Below, one piece after another: positions 13,128 through 59,210 of a stretch of DNA of 64,000 nt. Under the pieces are notes generated by a model, which saw only the letters and a program-made list of their open reading frames with translations, did not search any database and was not told the origin of the DNA. The stretch's first letter is position 1; the number at the start of each line of letters is the position of its first letter. The stretch is from Octopus sinensis (lineage: Eukaryota): the NCBI RefSeq assembly GCF_006345805.1, contig NC_043002.1, positions 38,316,001 to 38,380,000 on the forward strand. Reading direction: 5' to 3'. The position numbers were made by a program, and so were the translations under genes.

Positions 13128-13483
13128 TATATATACGAGTAGACAACGAACAAAGGGGACTCAACACATTTATTGGGAGTCACATGTATAGATCAGAACA
13201 GTTTGATTCAGACTCGTTGGTTCTGTGTTTTAAGTCATTGGATTCTGAATTGGAGTTCGATTGAAGAGAGTCAATGCTTACTACTGGAAGTTAGCCTGCA
13301 GTTCGTCGAGAAAGGTCACACGGTATAGCAGTTTGGTATTGGTGTTTCAGCCACAACAATTAGTTGCAAAATACCGCATGAACAGGAAATCGACCGCGTG
13401 GTGGACAAGAAATCGGGCGTGTGGTCGGGAGGAAGTAGATGTGGGGGTATATATGTATGTATATACGTATATATATATATATA

Positions 13484-14037
13484 TATATAGAAAATAGTAA
13501 AAAGTGAAAAAACTACAGAAGGCTTAAAGGTTAAAAAAATATATATATTTGCGTCAATATGTCTGAAGAATATTAAAAAAAATTTTTTTCCCTTACAATG
13601 ACATAGTTTAGAAGAAAGACCGGTTTCGCGTTTAGCTTTTCAAATTTTCCTGCGACGTTATGTTTATGTTGAATAGAGTTATCGTTATGTTTATGTTTAA
13701 AAGAGTTCTAAATAAGGGGAGGTAATGAGTGATTTCTTCCGGTGTAAGGGAGATAATCGCTTAAAATTTTTTTCTTTTCCCTTGATGTGAATTTCTCTGT
13801 ATCAGTATGTTGGCATGGTTAAGTCTGGGCTTGTACTTTTCAATGAAGAATGTTTCCTTGTTTAGTCTAATTTGTGTTGATGATCCGATAGCACATTGGT
13901 AAAATGGAAAGATTAAAAATTGTGGTAGTAGTTGCTTTGCGCATTTCTCAATGTGCTCACTAAAAAGTATCATTCTGTATTCTGGGAATGCAATCTGTTG
14001 TCGATGCAGTGTGCATCTACGTCTGAGTGATAGTCCC
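13484..14037 (-). mobile_element. Inverted copy of the Penelope 3' end/pseudo-LTR
   Basis: Reverse complement of 17501-18050 with about 10 differences by eye. Encodes the same MILFSEHIEKC...GKRKKF peptide (ORF 13761-13973). Confidence 0.92.
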
Positions 14038-14134
14038 CTGTAGTTTTTTCACTTTTTACTATTTTCTATATATTCAACCACGTTCTTTCACAAACCAACT
14101 TTCTTATCTATATATTAAACACGTGAGACCGAAA

Positions 14135-17100
14135 ATGCCACAGAAGACCAACACCTCGGATAAAACTACAAATGAGGACATACTCAAAGAACTGAAAAGT
14201 ATCAATACACAGCTCATTACCCTGAACAACAAAATCGAGGAATCAAACCTACTCGCCCGGAAAGTAAAAGCAGTGAAGATACAACTCGCTACACTGACCA
14301 GGTTAGTAAGGATCTGCAACTGTTATACACAACACTAAATCCAATTTTCATCAACAAATCCGAAAATAAAAAACACACACCAAATGAAACACAGCAGGAC
14401 ATCATACGCACCCAAATTAACCCAGCAAAAAGAAAAATAGGAAACATTTGGAATACAAACCTGCACAATAGAAGACTCGCCTTCTGGAACATGATAAAAA
14501 AATTCCAACAAAGCAGATATATACGATGGATGGATGAACTCAACACCAATTATCCTCCCACGCAAATTCCAGATAAAATTAATTCCTACGAGCCTGACGG
14601 ACAGAGAACTATTAGGGAAAAGTCAGCTCTGTTCAATTTAAGATTAGAAATAGAGCTTCTAAGACTAAGGGCCTCCTCCACAAATGGGAAAATTTAAAAG
14701 CATCGACGAGGAGATGCATAATATAATACAAAAACATACCGAGGACAACCCCTCGAAAATACATTAGATCATTGGAAGGATACCTGTGAAAAAGAAGACA
14801 GAATTCTCTCCTGCGCTGGGAGAAAACATCGATTTCTTCCAAAAATATAGTTCAACTTTCAAAAATGAATTGGGTACAAATAATCCCTTCCTTAAGAAAA
14901 TTACAAAAAATAAAAAAGAAAAACCAACAACCCACGAACAACCCAAACTATCCTCCATACACTAAAAACAGAAATCACCCACAACCAACCTTTGCAACCC
15001 CGCAAGACCTAACAGAGAACTAGCTGACAGACGACGCGTCTATGAAATAAATTACACAAAAACAGAAACACACAACCAACAACATCCTAATACCAGACCC
15101 CACCACCATACAGCACAAAACGACACTAGAATAAGAAATACACCACACACAAGTCGCTACTACCCCATGAACCAAAATTACTGGTCTCCACTGAACACAA
15201 GACAAACGCAAAAAAAACACTATGTCAAGCAACATCCCACATACAAGCAGTTCGAAACAAAAATATTTCACATACAGAAATTTTACACACACCACAAACA
15301 AAAACAACCATAGATTCCCACACACACACAACGATCGGGGGCAACAATACCACCATTCGCCCGACCCAATATCACACAACCTCACAGACAACTCATACAA
15401 ACAAAATTACACCCAACATTTTTTAGCCAGGGACCAGTGACACCAGGACACAGTCTGGAACCTAGTAATAAGGAAAAACCGAAGATAATCAACCTTTCAA
15501 CCAAACCTCTCTCTAACATAAAAATTGACACCCTCTCAAAAGGGCGCAAATTACGCCAACTCCACGCAGAGCCAACCTAAATGAAATCAAGGATAATATA
15601 ACAGAATTTTGCAGAAAATTAAGACTAGCAGAAGCATCAACCAGTTTCAATACTGAAGATGAATCACTAGTCAAGAACAAAAGTGAACACATCCCACACA
15701 GAGGAAGAAATAAAGATCTTGATGAATTCTGTAACCACATTGAGAACTTTTCCTACCATACTATACATAAACAGAAAGTTAACTCAAATTTTAACACTAC
15801 ACAATGGAAGGAACTGATAGAACTTCAAAATGATGAGGATATAACCATTAAGGAAGCAGACAAGGGAAGTGCAGTTGTAATAATGGATACATCATACTAT
15901 AGAAATCTTGTAATTTCCTTGCTTGATGACGACCAGCATTATGAAAAAATTACCAACTACACCCCACAAAAAATAATCAAAACTCTATCTTCACTAATCA
16001 AAACCCATGAAAAGGAACTAACAACCAAAGAGACTGACTTTTTAACAAACTTTAAAAGCAAACCTAGCCTTTTCAATGGTCTTCCAAAAATTCATAAAAG
16101 CCAAATTATAAATGAAACCATTAAAAAATCACCAAAGACATACATACACACACCTAACCCGGGGGACCTAAAACTACGACCCATTGTAGCTGGCCCAACC
16201 TGTGAAACACACAGACTAAGTCTATTTATGGACATCCTCCTGAAACCCTTCCTTAAACATATGGATAGCCATATCAGAGATGACTTAGATATGTTAAACC
16301 ACTTTCCAAAAAAAGCCAAGGAAGAAACAATCCTGGTTTCATTTGATGTAGTTAACTTATATACCAGTATACCTCATAATTATGGACTAGAGGCAATACA
16401 GTTCTGACTGGGCCAATTTCCGGAAGAAATACCAAAAAGGATCAGTAAAGAATTCATTACTAAATCAATTGAATTCATCCTACATAATAACCACTTCATG
16501 TTTGACAATACATTTTACCGTCAAAAATCCGGAATTGCTATGGGTACAAGAGCAGCACCAGTCATTGCGAACCTAACAATGGGCTACATGGAAATAATCA
16601 TTTACCAGGAATCCTTATCAATCTTTGGAAACCCCCTTTCTCAATACATAAAAGAGAATTGGAAACGATTCTTAAACGATTGTTTTATACTCTGGAATGA
16701 AAACAAAGATAAACTCCTAAAAGTTTAAAGCCTATTGAACAGCATAAACCCAAATATACAGTTCATAATGGAATACAACCAAAAGGAGCTCCCGTTCTTG
16801 GATATACTAATTAAAAAAATTAACCTTAAAATAGAAACAGACATTTTTTTACAAAGCCACAGACGCCAAACAATACCTTCTTTTTAATTCATGCCACCCA
16901 AGACACACTAAAACAAACATCTCCTTCAACCTTGCAAGAAGGATATGCACAATAGTGTCAGAACAAAATACCAGGAACTTTACACTGCAAGAACTCAAAA
17001 ACACCCTAATTGACAGACATTACCCAGCTCAACTCATAGAGGATGGGATCAGACGTGCAACAGAAATCAACATAGAAACTTTAAGAAAAGTTCAACACAA

Positions 17101-17777
17101 CAACACACCTTCCCCGAAAATACTACCTTACATATCTACATACAACCCCAGAAACAAAGAAGCCTTCACCATCATCACCCAGAATTTACCAATACTTCAT
17201 AAGGACCCCAAATTAAAGGAAATTCTAAACATACACCAAATCATTAAAAGCTACAAACAACCTAAATCACTTAAAAAGATTCTCACAAAGGCAATATTGT
17301 TTTCTGAAATTACGGATGCAAAAGTAAAAAAAATGTGGTAGATCGAACTGTGCAACATGTCCAAACCTGCTAGAAGGATCAGAATTCCTCTTTAAAGAGG
17401 GACAGAAATTCAAGATCAAATCTAACTTTACTTGTGCCTCTGAAAACATAATTTATGTCATAAAATGCTCGGGCTGCCACCAAGACTACGTGAGATCCAC
17501 GGGACTATCACTCAGACGTAGATGCACACTGCATCGACAACAGATTGCATTCCCAGAATACAGAATGATACTTTTTAGTGAGCACATTGAGAAATGCGCA
17601 AAGCAACTACTACCACAATTTTTAATCTTTCCATTTTACCAATGTGCTATCGGATCATCAACACAAATTAGACTAAACAAGGAAACATTCTTCATTGAAA
17701 AGTACAAGCCCAGACTTAACCATGCCAACATACTGATACAGAGAAATTCACACCAAGGGAAAAGAAAAAAATTTTAA
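14135..17777 (+). pseudogene. Penelope ORF (coiled-coil N-terminus, RT, GIY-YIG endonuclease), disrupted
   Basis: RT: KEADKGSAVVIMD, GLPKIHKS, LRPIVAGP, LVSFDVVNLYTSIP, GIAMGTRAAP, KRFLNDCF, LPFLD. Endonuclease: CxxC (CATC), NIIYVIKCSGCHQDYV, terminal KETFFIEKYKPRLN. Several frameshifts and stops. Confidence 0.92.
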
Positions 17778-17886
17778 GCGATTATCTCCCTTAAACCGGA
17801 AGAATTCACTCATTACCTCCCCTTATTTAGAACTCTTTTAAACATAAACATAACGATAACTCTATTCAACATAAACATAACGTCGC

Positions 17887-17925
17887 AAGAAATTTGAAAA
17901 GCTAAACGCGAAACCGGTCTTTCTT
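17887..17925 (+). ncRNA. Hammerhead-like motif in the Penelope pseudo-LTR, U3:A8 core variant
   Basis: AAGAAA-T-TTGAAAA-GC-TAAAC-GC-GAA-ACCGGT-C-TTTCTT. The same core is in the inverted copy (about 13612-13650, minus). Confidence 0.5.
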
Positions 17926-18080
17926 CTAAACTATGTCATTGAAAGGGAAAAAATTTTTTTTAATATTCTTCAGACATATACGCAAATATATATATTTTTT
18001 TAACCTTTAAGCCTTCTGTAGTTTTTTCACCTTTTACTATTTTCTATATATTCAACCACGTGCTTTCACAAACCAACTTT

Positions 18081-18202
<122 letters not shown>

Positions 18203-32703: not shown

Positions 32704-33139
32704 ACATTACATTCTGTTAAGAACCTAGTAGAAAGCTCCTCCACCTTCAGTTTTCACCCGCTGCTATCCAGTACTAGTGTTATACGTACTGCCAGATTTG
32801 CATTGGATCTTCTGTAGTGTGTGAATAGATAATTGAATAAGTTGGAGTCAACAAGAAAGAGTACAGTTGGACATATATTTGTAATCACCACAATTGTTTC
32901 CACGCAACGTAGTTCTTCAGGCTCGCAGGTATTTTGTTATGTAACCGTTTCCCTGCAACATGAGATCTAGTCGTTATTTCTCAAGCGATATAGAAATTCT
33001 CGCTGTAAATTCAAATTATTGGCCTCAAGAGCACCTTATCTGCCTGCCGTAGCCTGTGAGGTAGTAGCAGTCATTCAGTTTATCAAAAAATGTGTTGATA
33101 CATTGAGTAGCTGTTACTACCTCGCAGCCTAGAACATAT

Positions 33140-33285
33140 ATAGACTTTCTTCCCAATCCCATGATTCTGACTTCAGCCCCACTGCGTGGCAACTTAGGCA
33201 AGTGCCTTCTACTATAACCACGAGCCGACCAAACCCTAGCGAGTGGATTTAGTAGACGGGAACAGAAAGAAGGCCGTCTTATATA
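33140..33285 (+). mobile_element. SINE 5' half (main family), diverged
   Basis: cccactgcgtggcaacttaggcaagtgccttctactata...gagtggatttagtagacgggaac. Confidence 0.75.
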
Positions 33286-33309
33286 TATATGTTTTTGTTT
33301 TTTTTTTGT

Positions 33310-33519
33310 TTTTCCAGTTTCAGCTCTTGAGCTGTGGCCATGCTGGGGCACCGCCATTGTGGTGAAAGAGTACAGCAGGGATCACCACCCCCTGCCGGAG
33401 CCTCGTAGAGCTTTTAGGTGTTTTCGCTCAATAAACACACACAACGCCCGGTCTGAGAATCGAAACCGCGATCCTGCGACCGCGAGTCCGCTGCCCTAAC
33501 CACTAGGCCATTGCGCCTC

Positions 33520-33521
<2 letters not shown>
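33310..33521 (-). mobile_element. tRNA-derived SINE (third family) with clear A and B boxes
   Basis: Minus strand reads ggcgcaaTGGCCTAGTGGttagggcagcggactcgc...GGTTTCGATTCtc. Its tail, ggcggtgccccagcatggccacagc...ctgaaac, is shared with the main family. Confidence 0.8.
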
Positions 33522-33576
<55 letters not shown>

Positions 33577-33585
33577 TATTATATA

Positions 33586-33653
<68 letters not shown>

Positions 33654-33660
33654 TATATAT

Positions 33661-33900
33661 ATATAAATAATAAATATTAGGGAATAAATCCAAATTTACA
33701 GGGAAAAAATCAGATTTAGGATTAAATCCAATTTTATAGTAAAATATTATAAAATATTATTAGAGACAAAACCACTATTTTGCAAAACAAACAAGGAAAG
33801 ACTTAATCAATACATAAAATTTTAATAAATAGTCAAAAAAACCGCCACTACAATTGTTTCTTGTCTTGATCGACAATCTTCAGGTGGACTTCATTTTTTT
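33661..33900 (-). mobile_element. 5'-truncated PLE pseudo-LTR (family C) carrying an intact hammerhead
   Basis: AT-rich unit whose minus-strand 3' end runs into a long (TA)n, with the HHR near its 5' end; same architecture as the other pseudo-LTR units here. Confidence 0.55.
33845..33887 (-). ncRNA. Intact type-I hammerhead ribozyme
   Basis: Minus strand reads CCAC-CTGAAGA-TTGTC-GATCAA-GACAA-GAA-ACAATTGT-A-GTGG. All core residues and stems I, II and III pair; predicted GUA cleavage between 33849 and 33848. Confidence 0.8.
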
Positions 33901-33957
33901 GGTTGATTTTTCTGTTATCACATTTAGATTGTTAAAAAGTTCACTTTTCAACCAATA

Positions 33958-34695
33958 ATGATGCCTGTTTCCGCTTCCAGTGCGGCAACAGTGACAAACA
34001 CAGATAATGCAATTGATCACCAGGTTGATTACAAACGAAAATACAAGAATTTGAAAAGCAAGTTAAAGTTCTTGGTTTACGAACAAGAATGTTTCCTTGA
34101 AGAATTGCGAAGGGCCCAAAGAAAACTTCTGAAAGTTTCCAGGGACAAAAATTTCCTGTTGGATCGTCTATTATCATATGAAAATATCAACGACTCATCG
34201 GGCGACTCCGACGCGACAGCATCGAGTGAGAGCGACATAGAAATAAACAGAGAAAGCATTGTGACGAAAAAGAAAAAGACCATTAGCAGCAGCAGCAGTA
34301 GTGTTGGCTCCAGTGCAGCACCTGTGGTCACATCTCCACCATCATCATCGAATTTGTTAGGGACAGACACATCAACACTGTTTGTGAACCCTTCCTTTAC
34401 AAACTTGCTGTCACAAAACCCTGTTCTGCCATCTCCCTTAGTCACACCAGAAAATAAAAAGAAAACCAAAACCACAATTAAAAAATCAACCACAAAATCA
34501 AGTACACCCAAAGCCCCTGAACCACAGCCTGAAAGAATCGCTGGCCAGATGACCCGGGAAGAACTAGAAAGACATTTGGAGTCTCGACAGCATTCTTTCG
34601 GAATTGAGAAAGCACCTGCCAAGTTACCAATGGAAATATTAGCAATGAAAACTCTGATCCTGACAGTGAAACAGCCCAGGACGTTATATATATAG
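33958..34695 (+). CDS. INO80E: INO80 complex subunit E-like (CCDC95) ORF, uninterrupted, probable C-terminal frameshift; gene or retrocopy
   Basis: [53 protein letters not shown]...[13 protein letters not shown] matches the conserved INO80E N-terminus (human [53 protein letters not shown]...[10 protein letters not shown]). Confidence 0.85.
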
Positions 34696-34705
34696 ACTCA
34701 TATAC

Positions 34706-34795
<90 letters not shown>

Positions 34796-34798
<3 letters not shown>

Positions 34799-34980
34799 AG
34801 ATCGTTAGCCACTACACACATTTTTTTCTCTCCTTGTTTTTTTCTGTGTCCCTTTCTGTAGAAGAACGTAGGCTTGAAACGTAAAAGACTTTTTTTTTAT
34901 TCCTGAGCGTTATACTAATACATCTGTTTGTTTTGTACACCACCTGTCTTCGTCTTTTGTTTTCTTCGTAAACTCTCCCT
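34796..34980 (+). mobile_element. Family A hammerhead pseudo-LTR element (copy 2)
   Basis: Near-identical to 542-722; core CTTT-CTGTAGA-A-GAAC-GTAG-GCTT-GAA-ACGT-A-AAAG at 34852-34887; flanked by (TA)n. Confidence 0.75.
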
Positions 34981-35370
34981 ATGTATATATATAAAATAAT
35001 GAACGTGCCTAGATGCACTATAAAGCCAAAAAGGAAAACTTCAAATGTTATATTGTCACTAATAGAGACTGAGGGTGCAGAGTAGCACCTACATTGCTAG
35101 AAACAAGATCCCTATAACCACAAAAAGCATATTGTATACACTAACTGGAGAGATAACCGCCATACAGCGAGATCACTATACTTGCAAGGTTGGTTCGCTT
35201 GAAATTAAAGCTTACAGTAGTGACCATTCCATCGCTTAGGGTTAAGTAAAATCCCACCTGTCAGTATATAGTATTTACTATATGACTTAATGGCTGATTT
35301 AGCAAAATGGTAATGTCAAAATTATACGTACATACATACATACATAAATACACACTCACGCACACACACA

Positions 35371-50749: not shown

Positions 50750-52450
50750 TAGGATGATGATGATGATGAAGAGGACGACAACGAGGATTACGATGTTGCT
50801 GCTGCTGCTGCTGCTGATAATGATGATGATGATGATGATGTGAATGATGATGATGATGATGATGATGATGAAGATGATGATGATGATGATGGTGATGATG
50901 TGAATGATCATGATGCTGATGATGATAATGATACAGGCACCGCTAACGACGACGTCAACAACGACGACGACGATGGTGATGAGGATGATGATTCATGACG
51001 ATGACGCCGACAGGGAAGAGAGCGAGTAAGTGGAGACTCGTCACCCTTACCAACAACATGCGTGTTGCTGAAGGAAAAGACAAAAGAGTAAGGTCTGACT
51101 AATTTATGACAGGATAATTTGAGAGAAACGAAATGAAGAACAAAGTCAAAGGAAAACAAAAATATAAATATTATTATTGATTGAGAAGAAGAAGAAGAAG
51201 AAGAAGAAGAAGAAGAAAAAAAAGAAGAAAAAAGAAAAGAATCAGTAGAAGCCAAAAAGAAGAATAATGGTGGTGGTGGTGGTGAGATGATGAGAAGAAA
51301 AGAAAAGAAGATGGTGTGATATGATTGAGGAGAAGGAAGAAGAAGGAGAAGAAAAAGAAGAAAAGAAGAAAAAAGAAAAGAGAAAGAAAAAAGACAATGT
51401 GTTAAAAAAAAGATTGTTGATGATGATGATGATGAGAAGAAGAAGAAGAAGAAGAAGAAGAAGGAGAAGAAGAAAAAAAAAAGAAGTAGAAGCAAAAAAG
51501 AAGAAAAATATGGTGGTGGTGATGATGATGAGAAGAAGAAAAGAAGATGGTGATGATGATGAGTTTGAGGAGAAGAAGCAGAAAAAGAAGCAAAAAAAGA
51601 GAAAAATGTTGATGATGATGATGAGAGAAGAAGAAGAAGAAGAATAAGAAGAAGGAGAAGAAGAAAAAAAGAAAAAGAACGTAGAAACAAAAAGGAATAA
51701 AACTGGTGGTGATGATGATGAGAAGAAGAAAAGAAGATGGTGATGATGATGATGTTGAGGAGAAGAAGAAGAAGAAGAAGCAAAAAAAGAAGAAAAAGAT
51801 GTTGATGATGATGATGATGAGAAGAAGAAGAAGAAGAAGAAGAAGAAGGAGAAGAAGAAAAAAGAAAAAGAAGTAGAAGCAAAAAAGAAGAAAAATATGG
51901 TGGTGATGATGATGAGAAGAAGAAAAGAAGATGGTGATGATGATGATGTTGAGGAGAAGAAGAAGAAGAAGAAGAAAAAAAAGAAAAAAAAGATGTTGAT
52001 GATGATGATGATGAGAAGAAGAAGAAGAAGAAGAAGAAGAAGAAGAAGAAGAAGAAGAAGAAAAGAAGATGGCGATGATGATGATGATGAGAAGGAGAAA
52101 AAGAAGAAGCAAAGAAGAAGAAGAAGAAGAAGAAGACGAAGACGAAGAAGAAAAAGAAGAAGAAGAAGAAGAAAAAGAAGAAGAAAAAGAAGAAGAAGAA
52201 GAAAAAGAAGAAGAAGAAGAAGAAAAAGAAGAAGAAAAAGGACAACAACCGGTGGAGAGGAGGGAGAATGAAAGGGGAGGTGAAGAGATAAATTGAGGAG
52301 CAGGGAGATATGGAGGGAAAAGAGGAGGGGAGAAAGCTGAGAGAAAAAGATGAAGAGAAGGAGGCGGAAGGGAAGGTGCTCTGATTGCTGTAAAGTGGGA
52401 AAAGTGCAGTGATAATGGTGATGATGAAGATGATGATGATGATGATGATG
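50750..52450. repeat. 1.7-kb (GAT)n/(GAA)n array with higher-order periodicity
   Basis: Anchor gtagaa(g/a)c...tggtggtg at about 51245, 51486, 51681 and 51874. The 527-aa and 352-aa ORFs are by-products. Confidence 0.9.
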
Positions 52451-53086
52451 ATGATTTCAAAAAATAAGGAGGTAGGAGTAAGAGACAACATTGTTTAGGG
52501 AAGGAGTGAACCTGGAGCCATATTTATTTGACAATGTTTGTCTTAGTTAACTGTTTACAAATGTGAAGAGAATGGTTAAACAAACTGAGATTTTTCCAGC
52601 TCTACTTCAGATAGACGTACACACGCACACACGCACATACACACTCACACACACACACAAATACACGCACGCACACTCATATACAACGACATACATGCAC
52701 AAATATCCGGGGAAAACAAACTTAAGCACTCGCGCGCGCGCGTACACAGATATCCTGCAAAACGTATACAAAATCAATCACTTGTGTATGCATATATGCA
52801 AGTATGGATGTTATTTGCGTATTTAAGTGCGTTTGTGTGTATGCGTTCATATATTTATGTATATAAGCATACACACATACACATACACATGCACACACAC
52901 ACATATGTATATATGAATGCATGTATGTATTTACGCGTACATTTGCGATACTACATTATCTGTATTGATATGATCATTTATTATAAAAAATAACTCCTCT
53001 GATTTTAGACCCTATATTTGAGTGAGTATTATTTTCCTGAATTTCTCTTCTTCCAAGATATATATGCATATATATATATATATATG

Positions 53087-58792: not shown

Positions 58793-58845
58793 CCTCCAGC
58801 ATGGCCGCAGTCAAATGACTGGAACAAGTAAAAGAGTAAAAGAGT
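58793..58845 (+). mobile_element. SINE 3' tail fragment (also at 26824-26870 and 36079-36125)
   Basis: ctccagcatggccgcagtcaaatgactggaacaagtaaaagag. Confidence 0.8.
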
Positions 58846-59013
58846 ATACCCTTCTTTGGATCTTTCCTTTTCCTATGTTTCTGACGAAGAGCTCCGCTCG
58901 AAACGTTAAACCCTCCTTCTTTCCTTTTTTCCTGAGCGTCCAATAATACTATACTTGTTCCACGTCCTCGCGTTGTTGTGCTTTCTCTTTGTGTTTTCAT
59001 GTTTGGATTAACT
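58846..59013 (+). mobile_element. Family B hammerhead pseudo-LTR element
   Basis: Homologous to 36262-36385 and 54305-54405; 3' end in (TA)n. Confidence 0.75.
58877..58911 (+). ncRNA. Intact minimal hammerhead ribozyme (ACGU palindromic stem III)
   Basis: GTTT-CTGACGA-A-GAGC-TCC-GCTC-GAA-ACGT-T-AAAC; canonical core, 4-bp stems I and II. Confidence 0.75.
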
Positions 59014-59086
59014 ATATATATATATACATCGTCATATTGGACCACTGAATTCAACATTTTTTTCATTCTCCCAATTTAGTTCCTCT

Positions 59087-59210
59087 TATTCCTTTCTGTT
59101 GAAGAGTGTAGGTTCAAAACGTAAATGACTTTTCCATTTTTCCAGAACGTCAAACTAATACACACTTGCTTGTTCCTACACCACCCTTTGTCTTTGTTTT
59201 TCCATTTGAA

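What the first reader, a model, noticed from the sequence alone, without database searches (positions are those of the whole stretch)
33661..34980. Uninterrupted INO80E ORF joined head-to-head to an intact hammerhead pseudo-LTR and capped by a second one
Seen: an unspliced INO80E-like ORF with no poly(A). About 70 bp upstream of the ATG is a perfect antisense type-I hammerhead (33845-33887) in a unit ending in (TA)n; downstream lie (TA)n and a family A hammerhead unit. The layout [inverted pLTR][body][pLTR] mirrors the Penelope at 13484-18085. Inference: a host mRNA may have been retroposed or captured by PLE machinery through template switching at a ribozyme-cleaved end, a route to retrogenes not usually credited to PLEs. 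Counter-evidence: the two flanking units belong to different families, and ttttctgttatcacatttAG (33926-33927) looks like a splice acceptor. This could therefore be the native coding exon, with the antisense HHR able to cut only antisense transcripts.
Basis: partly seen in the sequence, partly recalled or inferred. Interest (0 to 1): 0.75.

Follow-up and report, generated by a model that had tools for sequence, protein, structure and literature searches.

The report
Young truncated INO80E retrocopy in octopus
This is not the native INO80E gene but a very recent, intron-free, tail-less copy of its messenger RNA, pasted into a TA repeat of the Octopus sinensis genome head-to-head with a small ribozyme-bearing mobile unit, which may show how Penelope-type elements build their odd inverted insertions.

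Summary
The window is Octopus sinensis chromosome CM016864.1. The ORF 33958-34695 is a processed retrocopy of INO80E. The real gene lies on CM016883.1 and has 8 coding exons. It keeps the same flanking genes in O. sinensis, O. vulgaris and O. bimaculoides.

- **Extent:** the copy spans 62 nt of 5'UTR, exons 1-7 and only 17 nt of exon 8. All 7 introns are removed exactly. There is no poly(A).
- **Age:** it shows 0 substitutions in 787 nt against the O. sinensis parent, plus one missing T that shifts the frame. It carries two O. sinensis-specific alleles, so it is younger than the sinensis/vulgaris split.
- **Hammerhead:** the antisense motif at 33845-33887 has a complete consensus core. It was found in 0 of 100 shuffles, but no Rfam family matches it. 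It sits in a 235-nt unit ending in (TA)n.
- **Junction:** unit and cDNA meet head-to-head through a 7-nt microhomology (CATTTTT), about 47 nt from the predicted cleavage site.
- **Downstream unit:** "family A" is an unrelated, independent repeat with a core deviation.

The retroposition is proven. Template switching at a ribozyme-cleaved end is not supported. Involvement of a Penelope-like element (twin priming in a TA tract) is plausible but unproven. Rivals are a pre-existing unit, a TA-targeting LINE, or cDNA capture at a break.

The parts
33523..33665 (.). Left (TA)n tract. It serves as the tail or target of the hammerhead unit and as the outer left flank of the composite.
   Evidence: Tandem Repeats Finder reports period 2, 80 copies.
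33666..33900 (-). Unit U1: a 235-nt AT-rich unit on the minus strand. The hammerhead sits at its 5' end, followed by about 183 nt and then (TA)n. It resembles a Penelope-like 3' fragment or a retrozyme. It is low-copy or unique in the DNA sampled here.
   Evidence: Sequence. No other copy in the window or in the other ~170 kb of octopus loci fetched, about 230 kb with the window. A decayed unit with the same architecture lies at 32705-32925.
33834..33900 (-). Type I hammerhead motif. The core is 33845-33887. The A7/U7 closing stem of helix I reaches 33900. The predicted cleavage site lies between 33849 and 33848.
   Evidence: Descriptor scan gives 1 hit and 0 of 100 shuffles. The minimum-free-energy fold reproduces helices I and II. 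The 8-nt palindrome ACAAUUGU gives a dimer at -29.2 kcal/mol against 2 x -10.1 for monomers. No Rfam match.
33892..33900 (.). Head-to-head junction. CATTTTT (7 nt) is shared by the U1 end and the 5' end of the INO80E mRNA. The window has T7 where the parent has T5.
   Evidence: Alignment of the window with three parent loci. The T7 run pairs within the ribozyme's closing stem.
33896..33957 (+). Retrocopied 5'UTR of INO80E (62 nt). It includes the 'acceptor-like' TTTAG at 33923-33927.
   Evidence: Identical to the sequence upstream of the ATG in the O. sinensis and O. vulgaris parents.
33958..34683 (+). Retrocopied coding sequence. Exons map as follows: exon 1 33958-34003, exon 2 34004-34080, exon 3 34081-34151, exon 4 34152-34271, exon 5 34272-34428, exon 6 34429-34501, exon 7 34502-34666, and the first 17 nt of exon 8 at 34667-34683.
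   Evidence: Exon-by-exon BLAST against L004, L003 and L001. Splice sites solved against the annotated proteins. 0 substitutions in 787 nt against the O. sinensis parent. The rest of exon 8, the 3'UTR and poly(A) are absent from the window.
34639..34640 (+). Frameshift site. The window has TT where all three parents have TTT. After it, the reading frame leaves the parental one.
   Evidence: It could be a real mutation or a homopolymer error of the long-read assembly.
33958..34695 (+). The resulting ORF of 245 aa. The first 227 aa are identical to the parent protein, followed by 18 out-of-frame residues and a stop in the TA-rich flank.
   Evidence: It is annotated as a gene in the O. sinensis assembly.
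34684..34795 (.). Right TA-rich flank: TTATATATATAGACTCATATACAT followed by (TA)n. The cDNA stops here with no microhomology to the mRNA.
34797..34985 (+). Family A unit: about 190 nt with a minimal-hammerhead-like motif at 34853-34886 and a TA tail. It is a neighbour, most likely an independent and older insertion into the same TA tract.
   Evidence: Five copies in the window and three in other loci at 72-93% identity. The core reads CUGUNGA. It is unrelated to U1.

Best explanation
This is a very young processed retrocopy, probably a retropseudogene, of the Octopus sinensis INO80E gene.

What is shown:
- Spliced INO80E mRNA was reverse-transcribed from an internal start 17 nt into the last exon up to its 5' end, so the copy has no poly(A).
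- The cDNA sits in a (TA)n microsatellite.
- Its 5' end is joined head-to-head, through a 7-nt microhomology (CATTTTT), to the 5' end of a 235-nt, TA-tailed unit that carries a complete type I hammerhead.

What I infer as the most likely course is one composite insertion by a TA-targeting Penelope-like (PLE) machinery, analogous to twin priming.
- One DNA end of the break primed on the TA-tailed hammerhead-unit RNA.
- The other DNA end primed internally on a bystander INO80E mRNA.
- The two cDNAs annealed at their 3' ends.
- INO80E thus took the place of one of the two PLE-derived arms of the inverted-plus-direct pair that PLE insertions normally show.

The hammerhead played no cleavage role in the join. 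As a single copy with a 1-bp helix III it is unlikely to cut efficiently.
For: Retrocopy (shown):
- The window is GCA_006345805.1 CM016864.1. The parent lies on CM016883.1 and has 8 coding exons over 18.3 kb. It is flanked by RPL6 and a gene of 586-593 aa in O. sinensis, O. vulgaris and O. bimaculoides. The Argonauta gene spans 5.6 kb.
- All 7 introns are removed exactly. There are 0 substitutions in 787 nt, and two O. sinensis-specific alleles are shared.
- Intron divergence between O. sinensis and O. vulgaris is 3.15%. About 12 substitutions would be expected if the copy were as old as that split.
- The remainder of exon 8, the 3'UTR and poly(A) are absent.

TA-targeted insertion:
- The composite 33666-34683 abuts TA tracts on both outer sides, whereas TA tracts cover only 4.1% of the window. 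Neither part has TA on its inner side.

PLE-type layout (circumstantial):
- It shows (TA)n, then an inverted 3' fragment, then a direct copy, then (TA)n.
- Related copies in L005 and L007 also lie next to TA tracts.
- The literature describes an inverted 5'-truncated copy at the 5' end of PLE insertions, a (TA)n bias, and hammerheads in pseudo-LTRs (PMC8557442; PMC4209133).
- The hammerhead has the architecture of metazoan type I motifs, which include PLE hammerheads: helix III of 1-2 bp with a 2-4 nt palindromic loop.
- Twin priming explains internal priming, inversion and junction microhomology (PMC2912911).
Against: - U1 has no detectable relative in about 230 kb of octopus DNA and no similarity to any PLE copy examined. 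Its PLE origin therefore rests on the hammerhead and the TA tail alone.
- The PLE family that does show TA flanks in this window has no canonical hammerhead.
- There is no microhomology at the 3' priming site.
- Target-site duplications cannot be read inside TA repeats.
- Other reverse transcriptases were recently active in the sister species, including Dong-R4, CR1, L1-Tx1 and RTE LINEs (PMC13282606).
- The empty site and the age of U1 could not be examined.
- Only one locus was studied.
Confidence: 0.42

Rival explanations
1. Two separate events. The hammerhead unit U1 was already at the locus as an older TA-targeted insertion. Later a TA-targeting retroelement enzyme (PLE, or a Dong-R4, RTE or CR1-type LINE) nicked the adjacent TA tract and copied INO80E mRNA. 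The 3' end of the cDNA then annealed by microhomology (CATTTTT) to the upstream target DNA inside U1, which deleted the TA and any sequence in between.
For: - This stretch is a nest of TA-tailed retroposons in both orientations: X, an abundant SINE, a tRNA-like SINE, family A and U1.
- Microhomology-mediated 5' attachment and target-site deletions are known for LINE-1 (PMC2912911).
- Several LINE clades and PLEs were recently active in O. vulgaris.
- U1 has no demonstrable link to the retrocopy other than adjacency.
Against: - It needs an extra event plus a deletion that removed exactly all TA between U1 and the cDNA while leaving the ribozyme and its closing stem whole.
- It does not explain why the primary template was primed internally on an mRNA with no poly(A) and no homology.
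- U1's hammerhead is undecayed, unlike the older unit X about 960 bp away.
Confidence: 0.33
2. Endonuclease-independent capture. A spontaneous double-strand break in the long, fragile (TA)n tract was repaired by end joining, with two free cDNA fragments used as filler. One fragment came from a hammerhead-unit RNA and one from INO80E mRNA. They were joined to each other by microhomology.
For: - The cDNA is 3'-truncated and has no poly(A), no readable target-site duplication and no homology at the outer junction.
- Two unrelated cDNAs lie in opposite orientation with a 7-nt microhomology between them.
- From my own knowledge: endonuclease-independent LINE-1 insertions and cDNA capture at breaks show these same features.
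Against: - U1 ends outwards precisely with its own TA tail merging into the tract, as expected for TA-primed reverse transcription rather than random ligation.
- The same outward-tail, inverted layout is seen for the bona fide PLE in the window.
Confidence: 0.14
3. This is the native INO80E coding exon, preceded by a splice acceptor at 33926-27, and the flanking hammerhead units are later insertions.
For: An AG preceded by a pyrimidine-rich stretch is present at 33926-27. The ORF is annotated as a gene.
Against: - An 8-exon INO80E with the same neighbouring genes exists on another chromosome of the same assembly and in two other Octopus species.
- The window copy joins those exons without introns.
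- The 'acceptor' lies inside the parent's own first exon and 5'UTR.
- The last exon is missing.
Confidence: 0.01
4. Assembly artefact. A cDNA-derived or chimeric long read was built into the chromosome, and no such insertion exists in the animal.
For: - Identity to the mRNA is 100%, and the only difference is a homopolymer indel typical of long-read errors.
- The locus lies between long TA repeats, which are hard to assemble.
- No independent assembly or read set could be consulted.
Against: - The copy lacks poly(A) and the last 140 nt of the mRNA, so it is not a full-length cDNA read.
- It is joined by microhomology to a non-genic unit and embedded in a 120-Mb chromosome.
- These are the marks of a biological insertion.
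Confidence: 0.04

Closest known systems
Processed retrocopies or retropseudogenes made in trans by LINE machinery (the mammalian L1 paradigm)
   Same: An intron-free copy of a spliced mRNA sits on a different chromosome from a multi-exon parent. It starts at or near the mRNA 5' end. It is a disabled copy, frame-shifted and truncated at the C-terminus.
   Different: It has no poly(A) tail and is 3'-truncated 17 nt into the last exon. It was inserted in a (TA)n microsatellite rather than at a TTTT/A nick. No target-site duplication can be read. An inverted ribozyme-bearing unit is fused to its 5' end.
[quoted passage not shown] 2013, PMC3846280)
   Same: A host gene copy sits next to an inverted PLE-type terminal unit, in a layout that recalls inverted pseudo-LTR followed by body.
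   Different: In A. vaga the genes keep their introns, are framed by pseudo-LTRs of one family, and have an 8-bp target-site duplication. Here all introns are gone, only one unit is attached, the downstream unit belongs to another family, and no duplication can be read.
LINE-1 twin priming (5'-inverted insertions; PMC2912911)
   Same: Two head-to-head cDNA arms are each primed from one end of the target, one of them internally, and are joined at a microhomology.
   Different: The two arms come from two different RNAs. The enzyme is unlikely to be L1 (TA target, no poly(A)). There is no microhomology at the internal priming site.
Metazoan type I and PLE hammerheads, and non-LTR retrozymes (Cervera and de la Pena 2014, PMC4209133; Li et al. 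2026 preprint, 10.64898/2026.07.22.740005)
   Same: The conserved core is complete. Helix III is 1 bp with a 4-nt palindromic loop, which favours a dimeric active form. The motif sits in a short (about 230 nt) non-coding unit. Related roughly 190-nt units in the same window occur in tandem.
   Different: The 10.1-11.1 pair is U-A rather than the usual G-C. It is a single copy rather than a tandem. No family members were found for a covariation test. No Rfam family matches it.
Chimeric retrogenes formed by RT template switching (U6-L1 and mRNA-L1 chimeras; own knowledge)
   Same: Two unrelated RNAs end up fused in one insertion.
   Different: Template switching gives both parts in the same orientation with a 3' poly(A). 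Here the parts are head-to-head with no poly(A), so this mechanism does not fit.

Membership tests
Processed retrocopy of INO80E | Multi-exon parent gene elsewhere in the same genome | tested here: met
   The parent of 8 coding exons lies on CM016883.1; the window is CM016864.1.
Processed retrocopy of INO80E | Exact loss of the introns covered by the copy | tested here: met
   All 7 exon-exon junctions are seamless, with 0 substitutions in 787 nt.
Processed retrocopy of INO80E | 3' poly(A) tail | tested here: not met
   The copy stops 17 nt into exon 8 and is followed by TA repeats. The rest of the mRNA is not in the window.
Processed retrocopy of INO80E | Target-site duplication | tested here: inconclusive
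   Both outer flanks are (TA)n, so no duplication can be recognised.
Hammerhead ribozyme, metazoan type I | Conserved core C3 U4 G5 A6 N7 G8 A9, G12 A13 A14, A15.1-U16.1, H17 | tested here: met
   CUGAAGA, GAAA and UA are at the right places. There is one hit in the window and none in 100 shuffles.
Hammerhead ribozyme, metazoan type I | Helices I and II, plus a short helix III with a palindromic loop | tested here: met
   Helix I is 4 bp plus an A7/U7 closing stem. Helix II is 5 bp. Helix III is C-G with an AAUU loop. The dimer fold is favoured (criterion from PMC4209133).
Hammerhead ribozyme, metazoan type I | G10.1-C11.1 pair typical of canonical hammerheads | tested here: not met
   The pair is U10.1-A11.1.
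Hammerhead ribozyme, metazoan type I | Match to a curated covariance model | tested here: not met
   No Rfam hammerhead family matches, even at E<=10 on 91 nt. A canonical minimal hammerhead used as a control is also missed.
Hammerhead ribozyme, metazoan type I | Covariation among homologues, and self-cleavage | not testable with these tools
   No other copy of U1 was found in about 230 kb. Cleavage needs a bench assay.
Penelope-like element terminal unit or non-LTR retrozyme (U1) | Sequence continuity with, or similarity to, the terminal region of an RT/GIY-YIG-encoding element | tested here: not met
   There is no similarity to the window PLE or to three other O. sinensis PLE copies. The sample is far too small to be decisive.
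Penelope-like element terminal unit or non-LTR retrozyme (U1) | Hammerhead inside the unit, and a microsatellite target or tail as in local PLEs | tested here: met
Penelope-like element terminal unit or non-LTR retrozyme (U1) | Repeated family, or tandem arrangement | tested here: inconclusive
   U1 is a single copy in the DNA available. The family A-like units do occur in tandem, at 58840-59205 and at L005 11744-12144.
PLE-mediated host-gene mobilisation (A. vaga type) | Host gene framed by pseudo-LTRs of one PLE family, with target-site duplication and retained introns | tested here: not met
   U1 and family A are unrelated. The introns are absent. The target-site duplication cannot be read.
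Twin-priming-type inverted insertion | Head-to-head arms, an internally primed arm, and microhomology at the inversion junction | tested here: met
   The arms are in opposite orientation. The INO80E arm starts internally in the mRNA. There is a 7-nt microhomology at 33892-33900.
Twin-priming-type inverted insertion | Both arms derived from the same RNA | tested here: not met
   The arms are U1 and INO80E, which are unrelated sequences.

The most novel reading that the evidence does not exclude
A Penelope-like insertion complex, or the hammerhead-bearing non-autonomous unit it mobilises, can seize a spliced host mRNA at its second priming step. This would create intron-free, poly(A)-less retrocopies inside TA microsatellites, by a route that was active very recently in Octopus sinensis.

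If so, this locus is a natural experiment. It would show that the two arms of the enigmatic inverted PLE insertions are primed independently on separate RNA molecules, rather than by self-priming of a single template.
Probability: 0.33. Interest if true: 0.7.

Novelty: new variant of a known kind. Interest (0 to 1): 0.5.

Why it matters
A retrocopy in itself is ordinary. This one is unusual for three reasons.
- It is essentially brand new, with 0 substitutions, so its junctions are still pristine.
- It has none of the L1 hallmarks: no poly(A), and it was primed internally.
- It sits in a TA microsatellite, fused by microhomology to an inverted hammerhead unit. That matches the architecture of Penelope-like insertions, whose integration mechanism is still undefined (PMC8557442).

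If the two parts arrived together, the locus would show that the two arms of a PLE insertion can come from different RNAs. That favours two independent priming events over self-priming models (PMC3846280). It would also add spliced mRNAs to the cargo that PLE enzymes can copy; until now only intron-containing genes framed by pseudo-LTRs in a rotifer were reported.

There are practical consequences too. The annotated 245-aa 'INO80E-like gene' of O. sinensis should be treated as a truncated retrocopy. It is predicted to be absent from O. vulgaris and O. bimaculoides and may be polymorphic, which would make it useful as a marker of recent reverse-transcriptase activity.

Tried and rejected
- **Rfam:** searches of the whole window at gathering thresholds, of 4 kb at E<=10 and of 91 nt at E<=10 found no hammerhead. 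A control on the canonical minimal hammerhead at 58881 also found nothing. Rfam is therefore uninformative for these minimal metazoan motifs.
- **Last exon:** searches for it and for the 3'UTR in the window (six-frame motif search and sensitive BLAST) found them absent.
- **U1 and X relatives:** BLAST against the window and 8 other octopus loci (about 170 kb more) gave no relatives, so U1 could not be classified. Aligning U1 with X shows similarity only in the ribozyme core.
- **Metagenome scan:** a scan for the ribozyme pattern gave one hit, inside a bacterial glycosyltransferase-like gene. It is a chance match.
- **PLE ORFs:** Pfam gave only a weak RVT_1 hit (E 0.075). PLE identity rests on RT homologues, on the GIY-YIG motif read directly and on the repeat layout.
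- **tRNA-like SINE head:** ARAGORN found nothing.
- **Orthologous empty site:** I could not reach it in O. vulgaris or O. bimaculoides. No called gene lies within 10 kb and no eukaryotic genome search is available.
- **Rejected, native exon with a splice acceptor:** refuted.
- **Rejected, template switching at a ribozyme-cleaved end:** the junction is 47 nt from the cleavage site and the orientation is wrong.
- **Rejected, family A as the matching second pseudo-LTR:** it is an unrelated family with a core deviation, and other copies also sit behind TA tracts.
- **Rejected, later deletion of a once-complete retrocopy:** possible, but unparsimonious for a copy with 0 substitutions.
Full report
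**What the ORF is**

Window 33958-34695 (+) is an open reading frame of 245 aa. It carries the Pfam INO80E domain at residues 24-71, with E 2.3e-22. Its best database relative is INO80 complex subunit E of Octopus bimaculoides: 262 aa, 99% identity over 93% of the query.

An alignment with cephalopod and other mollusc orthologues shows that the window protein follows them up to ...LPMEI. It then diverges and lacks the conserved C-terminus ...[35 protein letters not shown]. tblastn shows that [14 protein letters not shown] is still encoded, but one base out of frame. The last 19 residues are encoded nowhere in the window.

**Where the window comes from, and where the real gene is**

An exact look-up of the 245-aa product places the window on chromosome CM016864.1 of assembly GCA_006345805.1, where this ORF is a called gene. 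The same 90% cluster holds a 262-aa INO80E of O. sinensis (XP_029651064.1) and O. vulgaris.

That protein is encoded on a different chromosome of the same assembly (CM016883.1, locus L004) and in O. vulgaris (L003). In both, as in O. bimaculoides (L001), the gene spans 14-19 kb. It lies between a ribosomal protein L6 gene and a gene of 586-593 aa. The Argonauta hians gene also spans 5.6 kb for 265 aa.

Solving the splice sites against the annotated proteins gives the same 8 coding exons and 7 introns in all three Octopus species. Six introns are GT-AG, and intron 5 is GC-AG.

**It is a processed retrocopy**

Exon-by-exon BLAST tiles the window sequence 33896-34683 onto parent exons 1 to 8 with no intervening sequence. 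In a four-way alignment with the spliced parents, the copy differs from the O. sinensis parent at no substituted position over 787 nt. The only difference is one missing T in a TTT run at 34639-40.

The copy shares the two positions at which O. sinensis differs from O. vulgaris (34005 and 34080). It differs from O. bimaculoides at 16 positions. Introns of the parent differ by 3.15% between O. sinensis and O. vulgaris, and by 6.1% from O. bimaculoides.

A neutrally evolving copy as old as the sinensis/vulgaris split should therefore have collected about 12 substitutions, whereas it has none. I infer that the insertion is much younger than that split. I predict it is absent from the other two species, and it may be polymorphic.

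The single-base deletion could be real, or it could be a homopolymer error of the long-read assembly. Either way the conserved C-terminus is lost, because the parental frame runs into the TA repeat.

**The ends of the copy**

At the 5' end, homology to the parent begins 62 nt upstream of the ATG. The native-exon reading is therefore refuted.

At the 3' end, the copy matches only the first 17 nt of exon 8 (34667-34683). It then continues as TTATATATATAGACTCATATACAT(TA)n, where the parent has CCTCAGG.... The missing part is about 62 nt of coding sequence, a short 3'UTR with AATAAA, and the poly(A). There is no microhomology at this end.

**The hammerhead and its unit**

On the minus strand, 33887-33845 reads CCAC-CUGAAGA-UUGUC-GAUCAA-GACAA-GAAA-C-AAUU-G-UA-GUGG. 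A strict descriptor requires the core, helix I of at least 4 bp, helix II of at least 3 bp, and a helix III hairpin. It finds this site alone in the window, none in 100 shuffles, and none in 111 kb of other octopus DNA.

The minimum-free-energy fold reproduces helices I and II and adds an A7/U7 closing stem that reaches 33900. Helix III is one C-G pair with a palindromic AAUU loop. This is the architecture that Cervera and de la Pena describe for metazoan type I hammerheads, which work as dimers (PMC4209133). Two copies co-fold through the 8-nt palindrome, at -29.2 kcal/mol against 2 x -10.1 for monomers.

Against full membership, the 10.1-11.1 pair is U-A, and no Rfam family matches. However, Rfam also misses a canonical minimal hammerhead at 58881-58907.

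The motif sits at the 5' end of a 235-nt AT-rich unit (U1, 33666-33900, minus strand) that runs into (TA)n at 33523-33665. U1 has no other copy in about 230 kb of octopus DNA. A decayed unit with the same plan lies at 32705-32925: a hammerhead-like core sharing CTGAAGA...GAAACAATTGT, then about 180 nt, then (TA)n.

**The junction**

The window reads ...GGACTTCATTTTTTTGGTTG..., and the parent reads ...GTTTGCATTTTTGGTTG.... The 7 nt CATTTTT can be assigned to either partner. The T7 run belongs to the ribozyme's closing stem.

The join is head-to-head, meaning the 5' end of the U1 RNA sense meets the 5' end of the mRNA sense. It lies about 47 nt upstream of the predicted cleavage site (33849|33848). 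The complete ribozyme is retained, so the template end was not produced by cleavage at this ribozyme. A head-to-head join also cannot come from a simple jump of the enzyme from one RNA to another.

**The downstream unit**

Family A (34797-34985) has 5 copies in the window and 3 in other loci, at 72-93% identity. It ends in (TA)n and usually also sits behind TA-rich DNA.

Its motif fits the PLE minimal hammerhead: a bulged base after A9, a G10.1-C11.1 pair, and the ACGU palindrome. However, it has U at core position 6 in all copies. A relative with the canonical CUGACGA lies at 58881-58907, in a tandem pair of such units at 58840-59205.

Family A is unrelated to U1. I regard it as an independent neighbour, not as a second pseudo-LTR.

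**Context**

TA tracts cover 4.1% of the window in 62 tracts. The composite 33666-34683 abuts one on each outer side, and neither part has TA on its inner side. The chance of both ends abutting a tract is about 1e-4.

The Penelope-like element at 13483-18093 is supported by several observations.
- Its RT has mollusc RT relatives.
- It has a C-terminal GIY-YIG motif, IIYVIKCSGCHQDYVRSTG, preceded by a CxxC.
- It shows (TA)n, then an inverted 3' fragment (13483-14040), then a 78-nt partial direct repeat, then the body, then (TA)n.
- The inverted arm is 31 nt shorter at its outer end. This is comparable to the 30-40 bp 'tail' described in the literature.
- Diverged copies in L005 and L007 also lie next to TA tracts at their projected ends.

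Craig et al. describe these features for PLEs: 5' truncation, an inverted 5'-truncated copy at the 5' end, microsatellite bias including (TA)n, and hammerheads in pseudo-LTRs (PMC8557442).

**Mechanism**

I favour one composite event, at about 0.4. This is inference. A TA-targeting PLE-type complex opened the TA tract. One DNA end primed on the TA tail of the U1 RNA. The other end primed internally on a bystander INO80E mRNA. The two cDNAs annealed at CATTTTT.

This follows the logic of twin priming (PMC2912911). It accounts in one step for the missing poly(A), the internal start, the head-to-head orientation, the TA on the outer flanks only, the inner microhomology, and the undecayed ribozyme.

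The main rival, at about 0.33, is that U1 was already there. In that case the INO80E cDNA, made by any TA-targeting enzyme, attached to U1 by microhomology with a target deletion. Dong-R4, CR1, L1-Tx1 and RTE LINEs, as well as PLEs, were all recently active in O. vulgaris (PMC13282606).

Capture of free cDNAs at a break in the fragile TA tract comes third, at about 0.14. An assembly artefact is unlikely, at about 0.04.

**Comparison with known cases and novelty**

PLE enzymes have been reported to move host genes in trans in Adineta vaga. There the genes keep their introns and are framed by pseudo-LTRs of one family with a target-site duplication (PMC3846280). Those defining features are not met here.

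My literature searches found no report of PLE-linked processed retrocopies, and none of octopus retrocopies of this kind.

The safest label is a new variant of a known kind: an ordinary retrocopy in nature, with an unusual, non-L1, TA-microsatellite and ribozyme-unit architecture. Its interest depends on the untested single-event reading.

Noticed in passing
window 13483-18093: A decayed Penelope-like element with frameshifted RT and GIY-YIG ORFs. TA tracts flank it on both sides. It has a 558-nt inverted 3' fragment (13483-14040) and a 78-nt partial direct repeat (14038-14115 = 18016-18093). The inverted arm stops 31 nt short of the direct copy's 3' end, at an internal TATATA. No canonical hammerhead was found in it.
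   Followed up: partly
window 58840-59205: A tandem pair of family A-like units of about 190 nt, each ending in (TA)n. The first carries a canonical minimal hammerhead (58881-58907, CUGACGA-A-GAGC...GCUC-GAAA-CG-UU) of the PLE/retrozyme type. Another tandem pair lies at L005 11744-12144.
   Followed up: partly
window 32705-32925 (minus strand): Unit X has the same plan as U1: a hammerhead-like core sharing CTGAAGA...GAAACAATTGT, then about 180 nt, then (TA)n. Helix II is disrupted and G sits at the cleavage position. Otherwise it has no sequence similarity to U1. On its inner side lie 218 nt of unique DNA and then a SINE-like repeat that ends in TA, so it may be a second inverted-unit-plus-cargo composite.
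   Followed up: partly
window 33144-33292 (+) and 33293-33522 (-): An abundant SINE-like repeat of about 150 nt ends in TATATATATA; it gave 19 further hits in the ~175 kb searched. Beside it lies a minus-strand element whose head looks tRNA-like by eye, but ARAGORN does not call it. Both are inserted in or next to TA tracts. This suggests that TA-tailed retroposons seed and target the many TA microsatellites here.
   Followed up: partly
L004 18592 / L003 18705 / L001 15657 (parent INO80E intron 5): Intron 5 of the parental INO80E gene uses a GC-AG splice pair, and this is conserved in O. sinensis, O. vulgaris and O. bimaculoides.
   Followed up: yes
window, whole: Microsatellite density is extreme: 62 TA tracts (4.1% of the window), plus many AC, ATAG/TATC, GAA and CTT arrays. 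A 527-aa low-complexity ORF at 50908-52491 (-) lies over AGA/GAT repeats.
   Followed up: no
L001 32488-32517 (+): A further complete hammerhead consensus (CUGAUGA...GAAA, helix I 6 bp, helix II 5 bp) lies in O. bimaculoides, inside the range of the gene downstream of INO80E. Consensus-complete motifs therefore occur roughly once per 30-60 kb in the octopus DNA sampled.
   Followed up: no
L008 255-297 (metagenome contig MDTD01181953.1): An exact match to the relaxed ribozyme pattern lies inside a bacterial glycosyltransferase-like coding sequence (...ETIVVDDGS...). This shows that the bare pattern turns up by chance in very large databases.
   Followed up: yes
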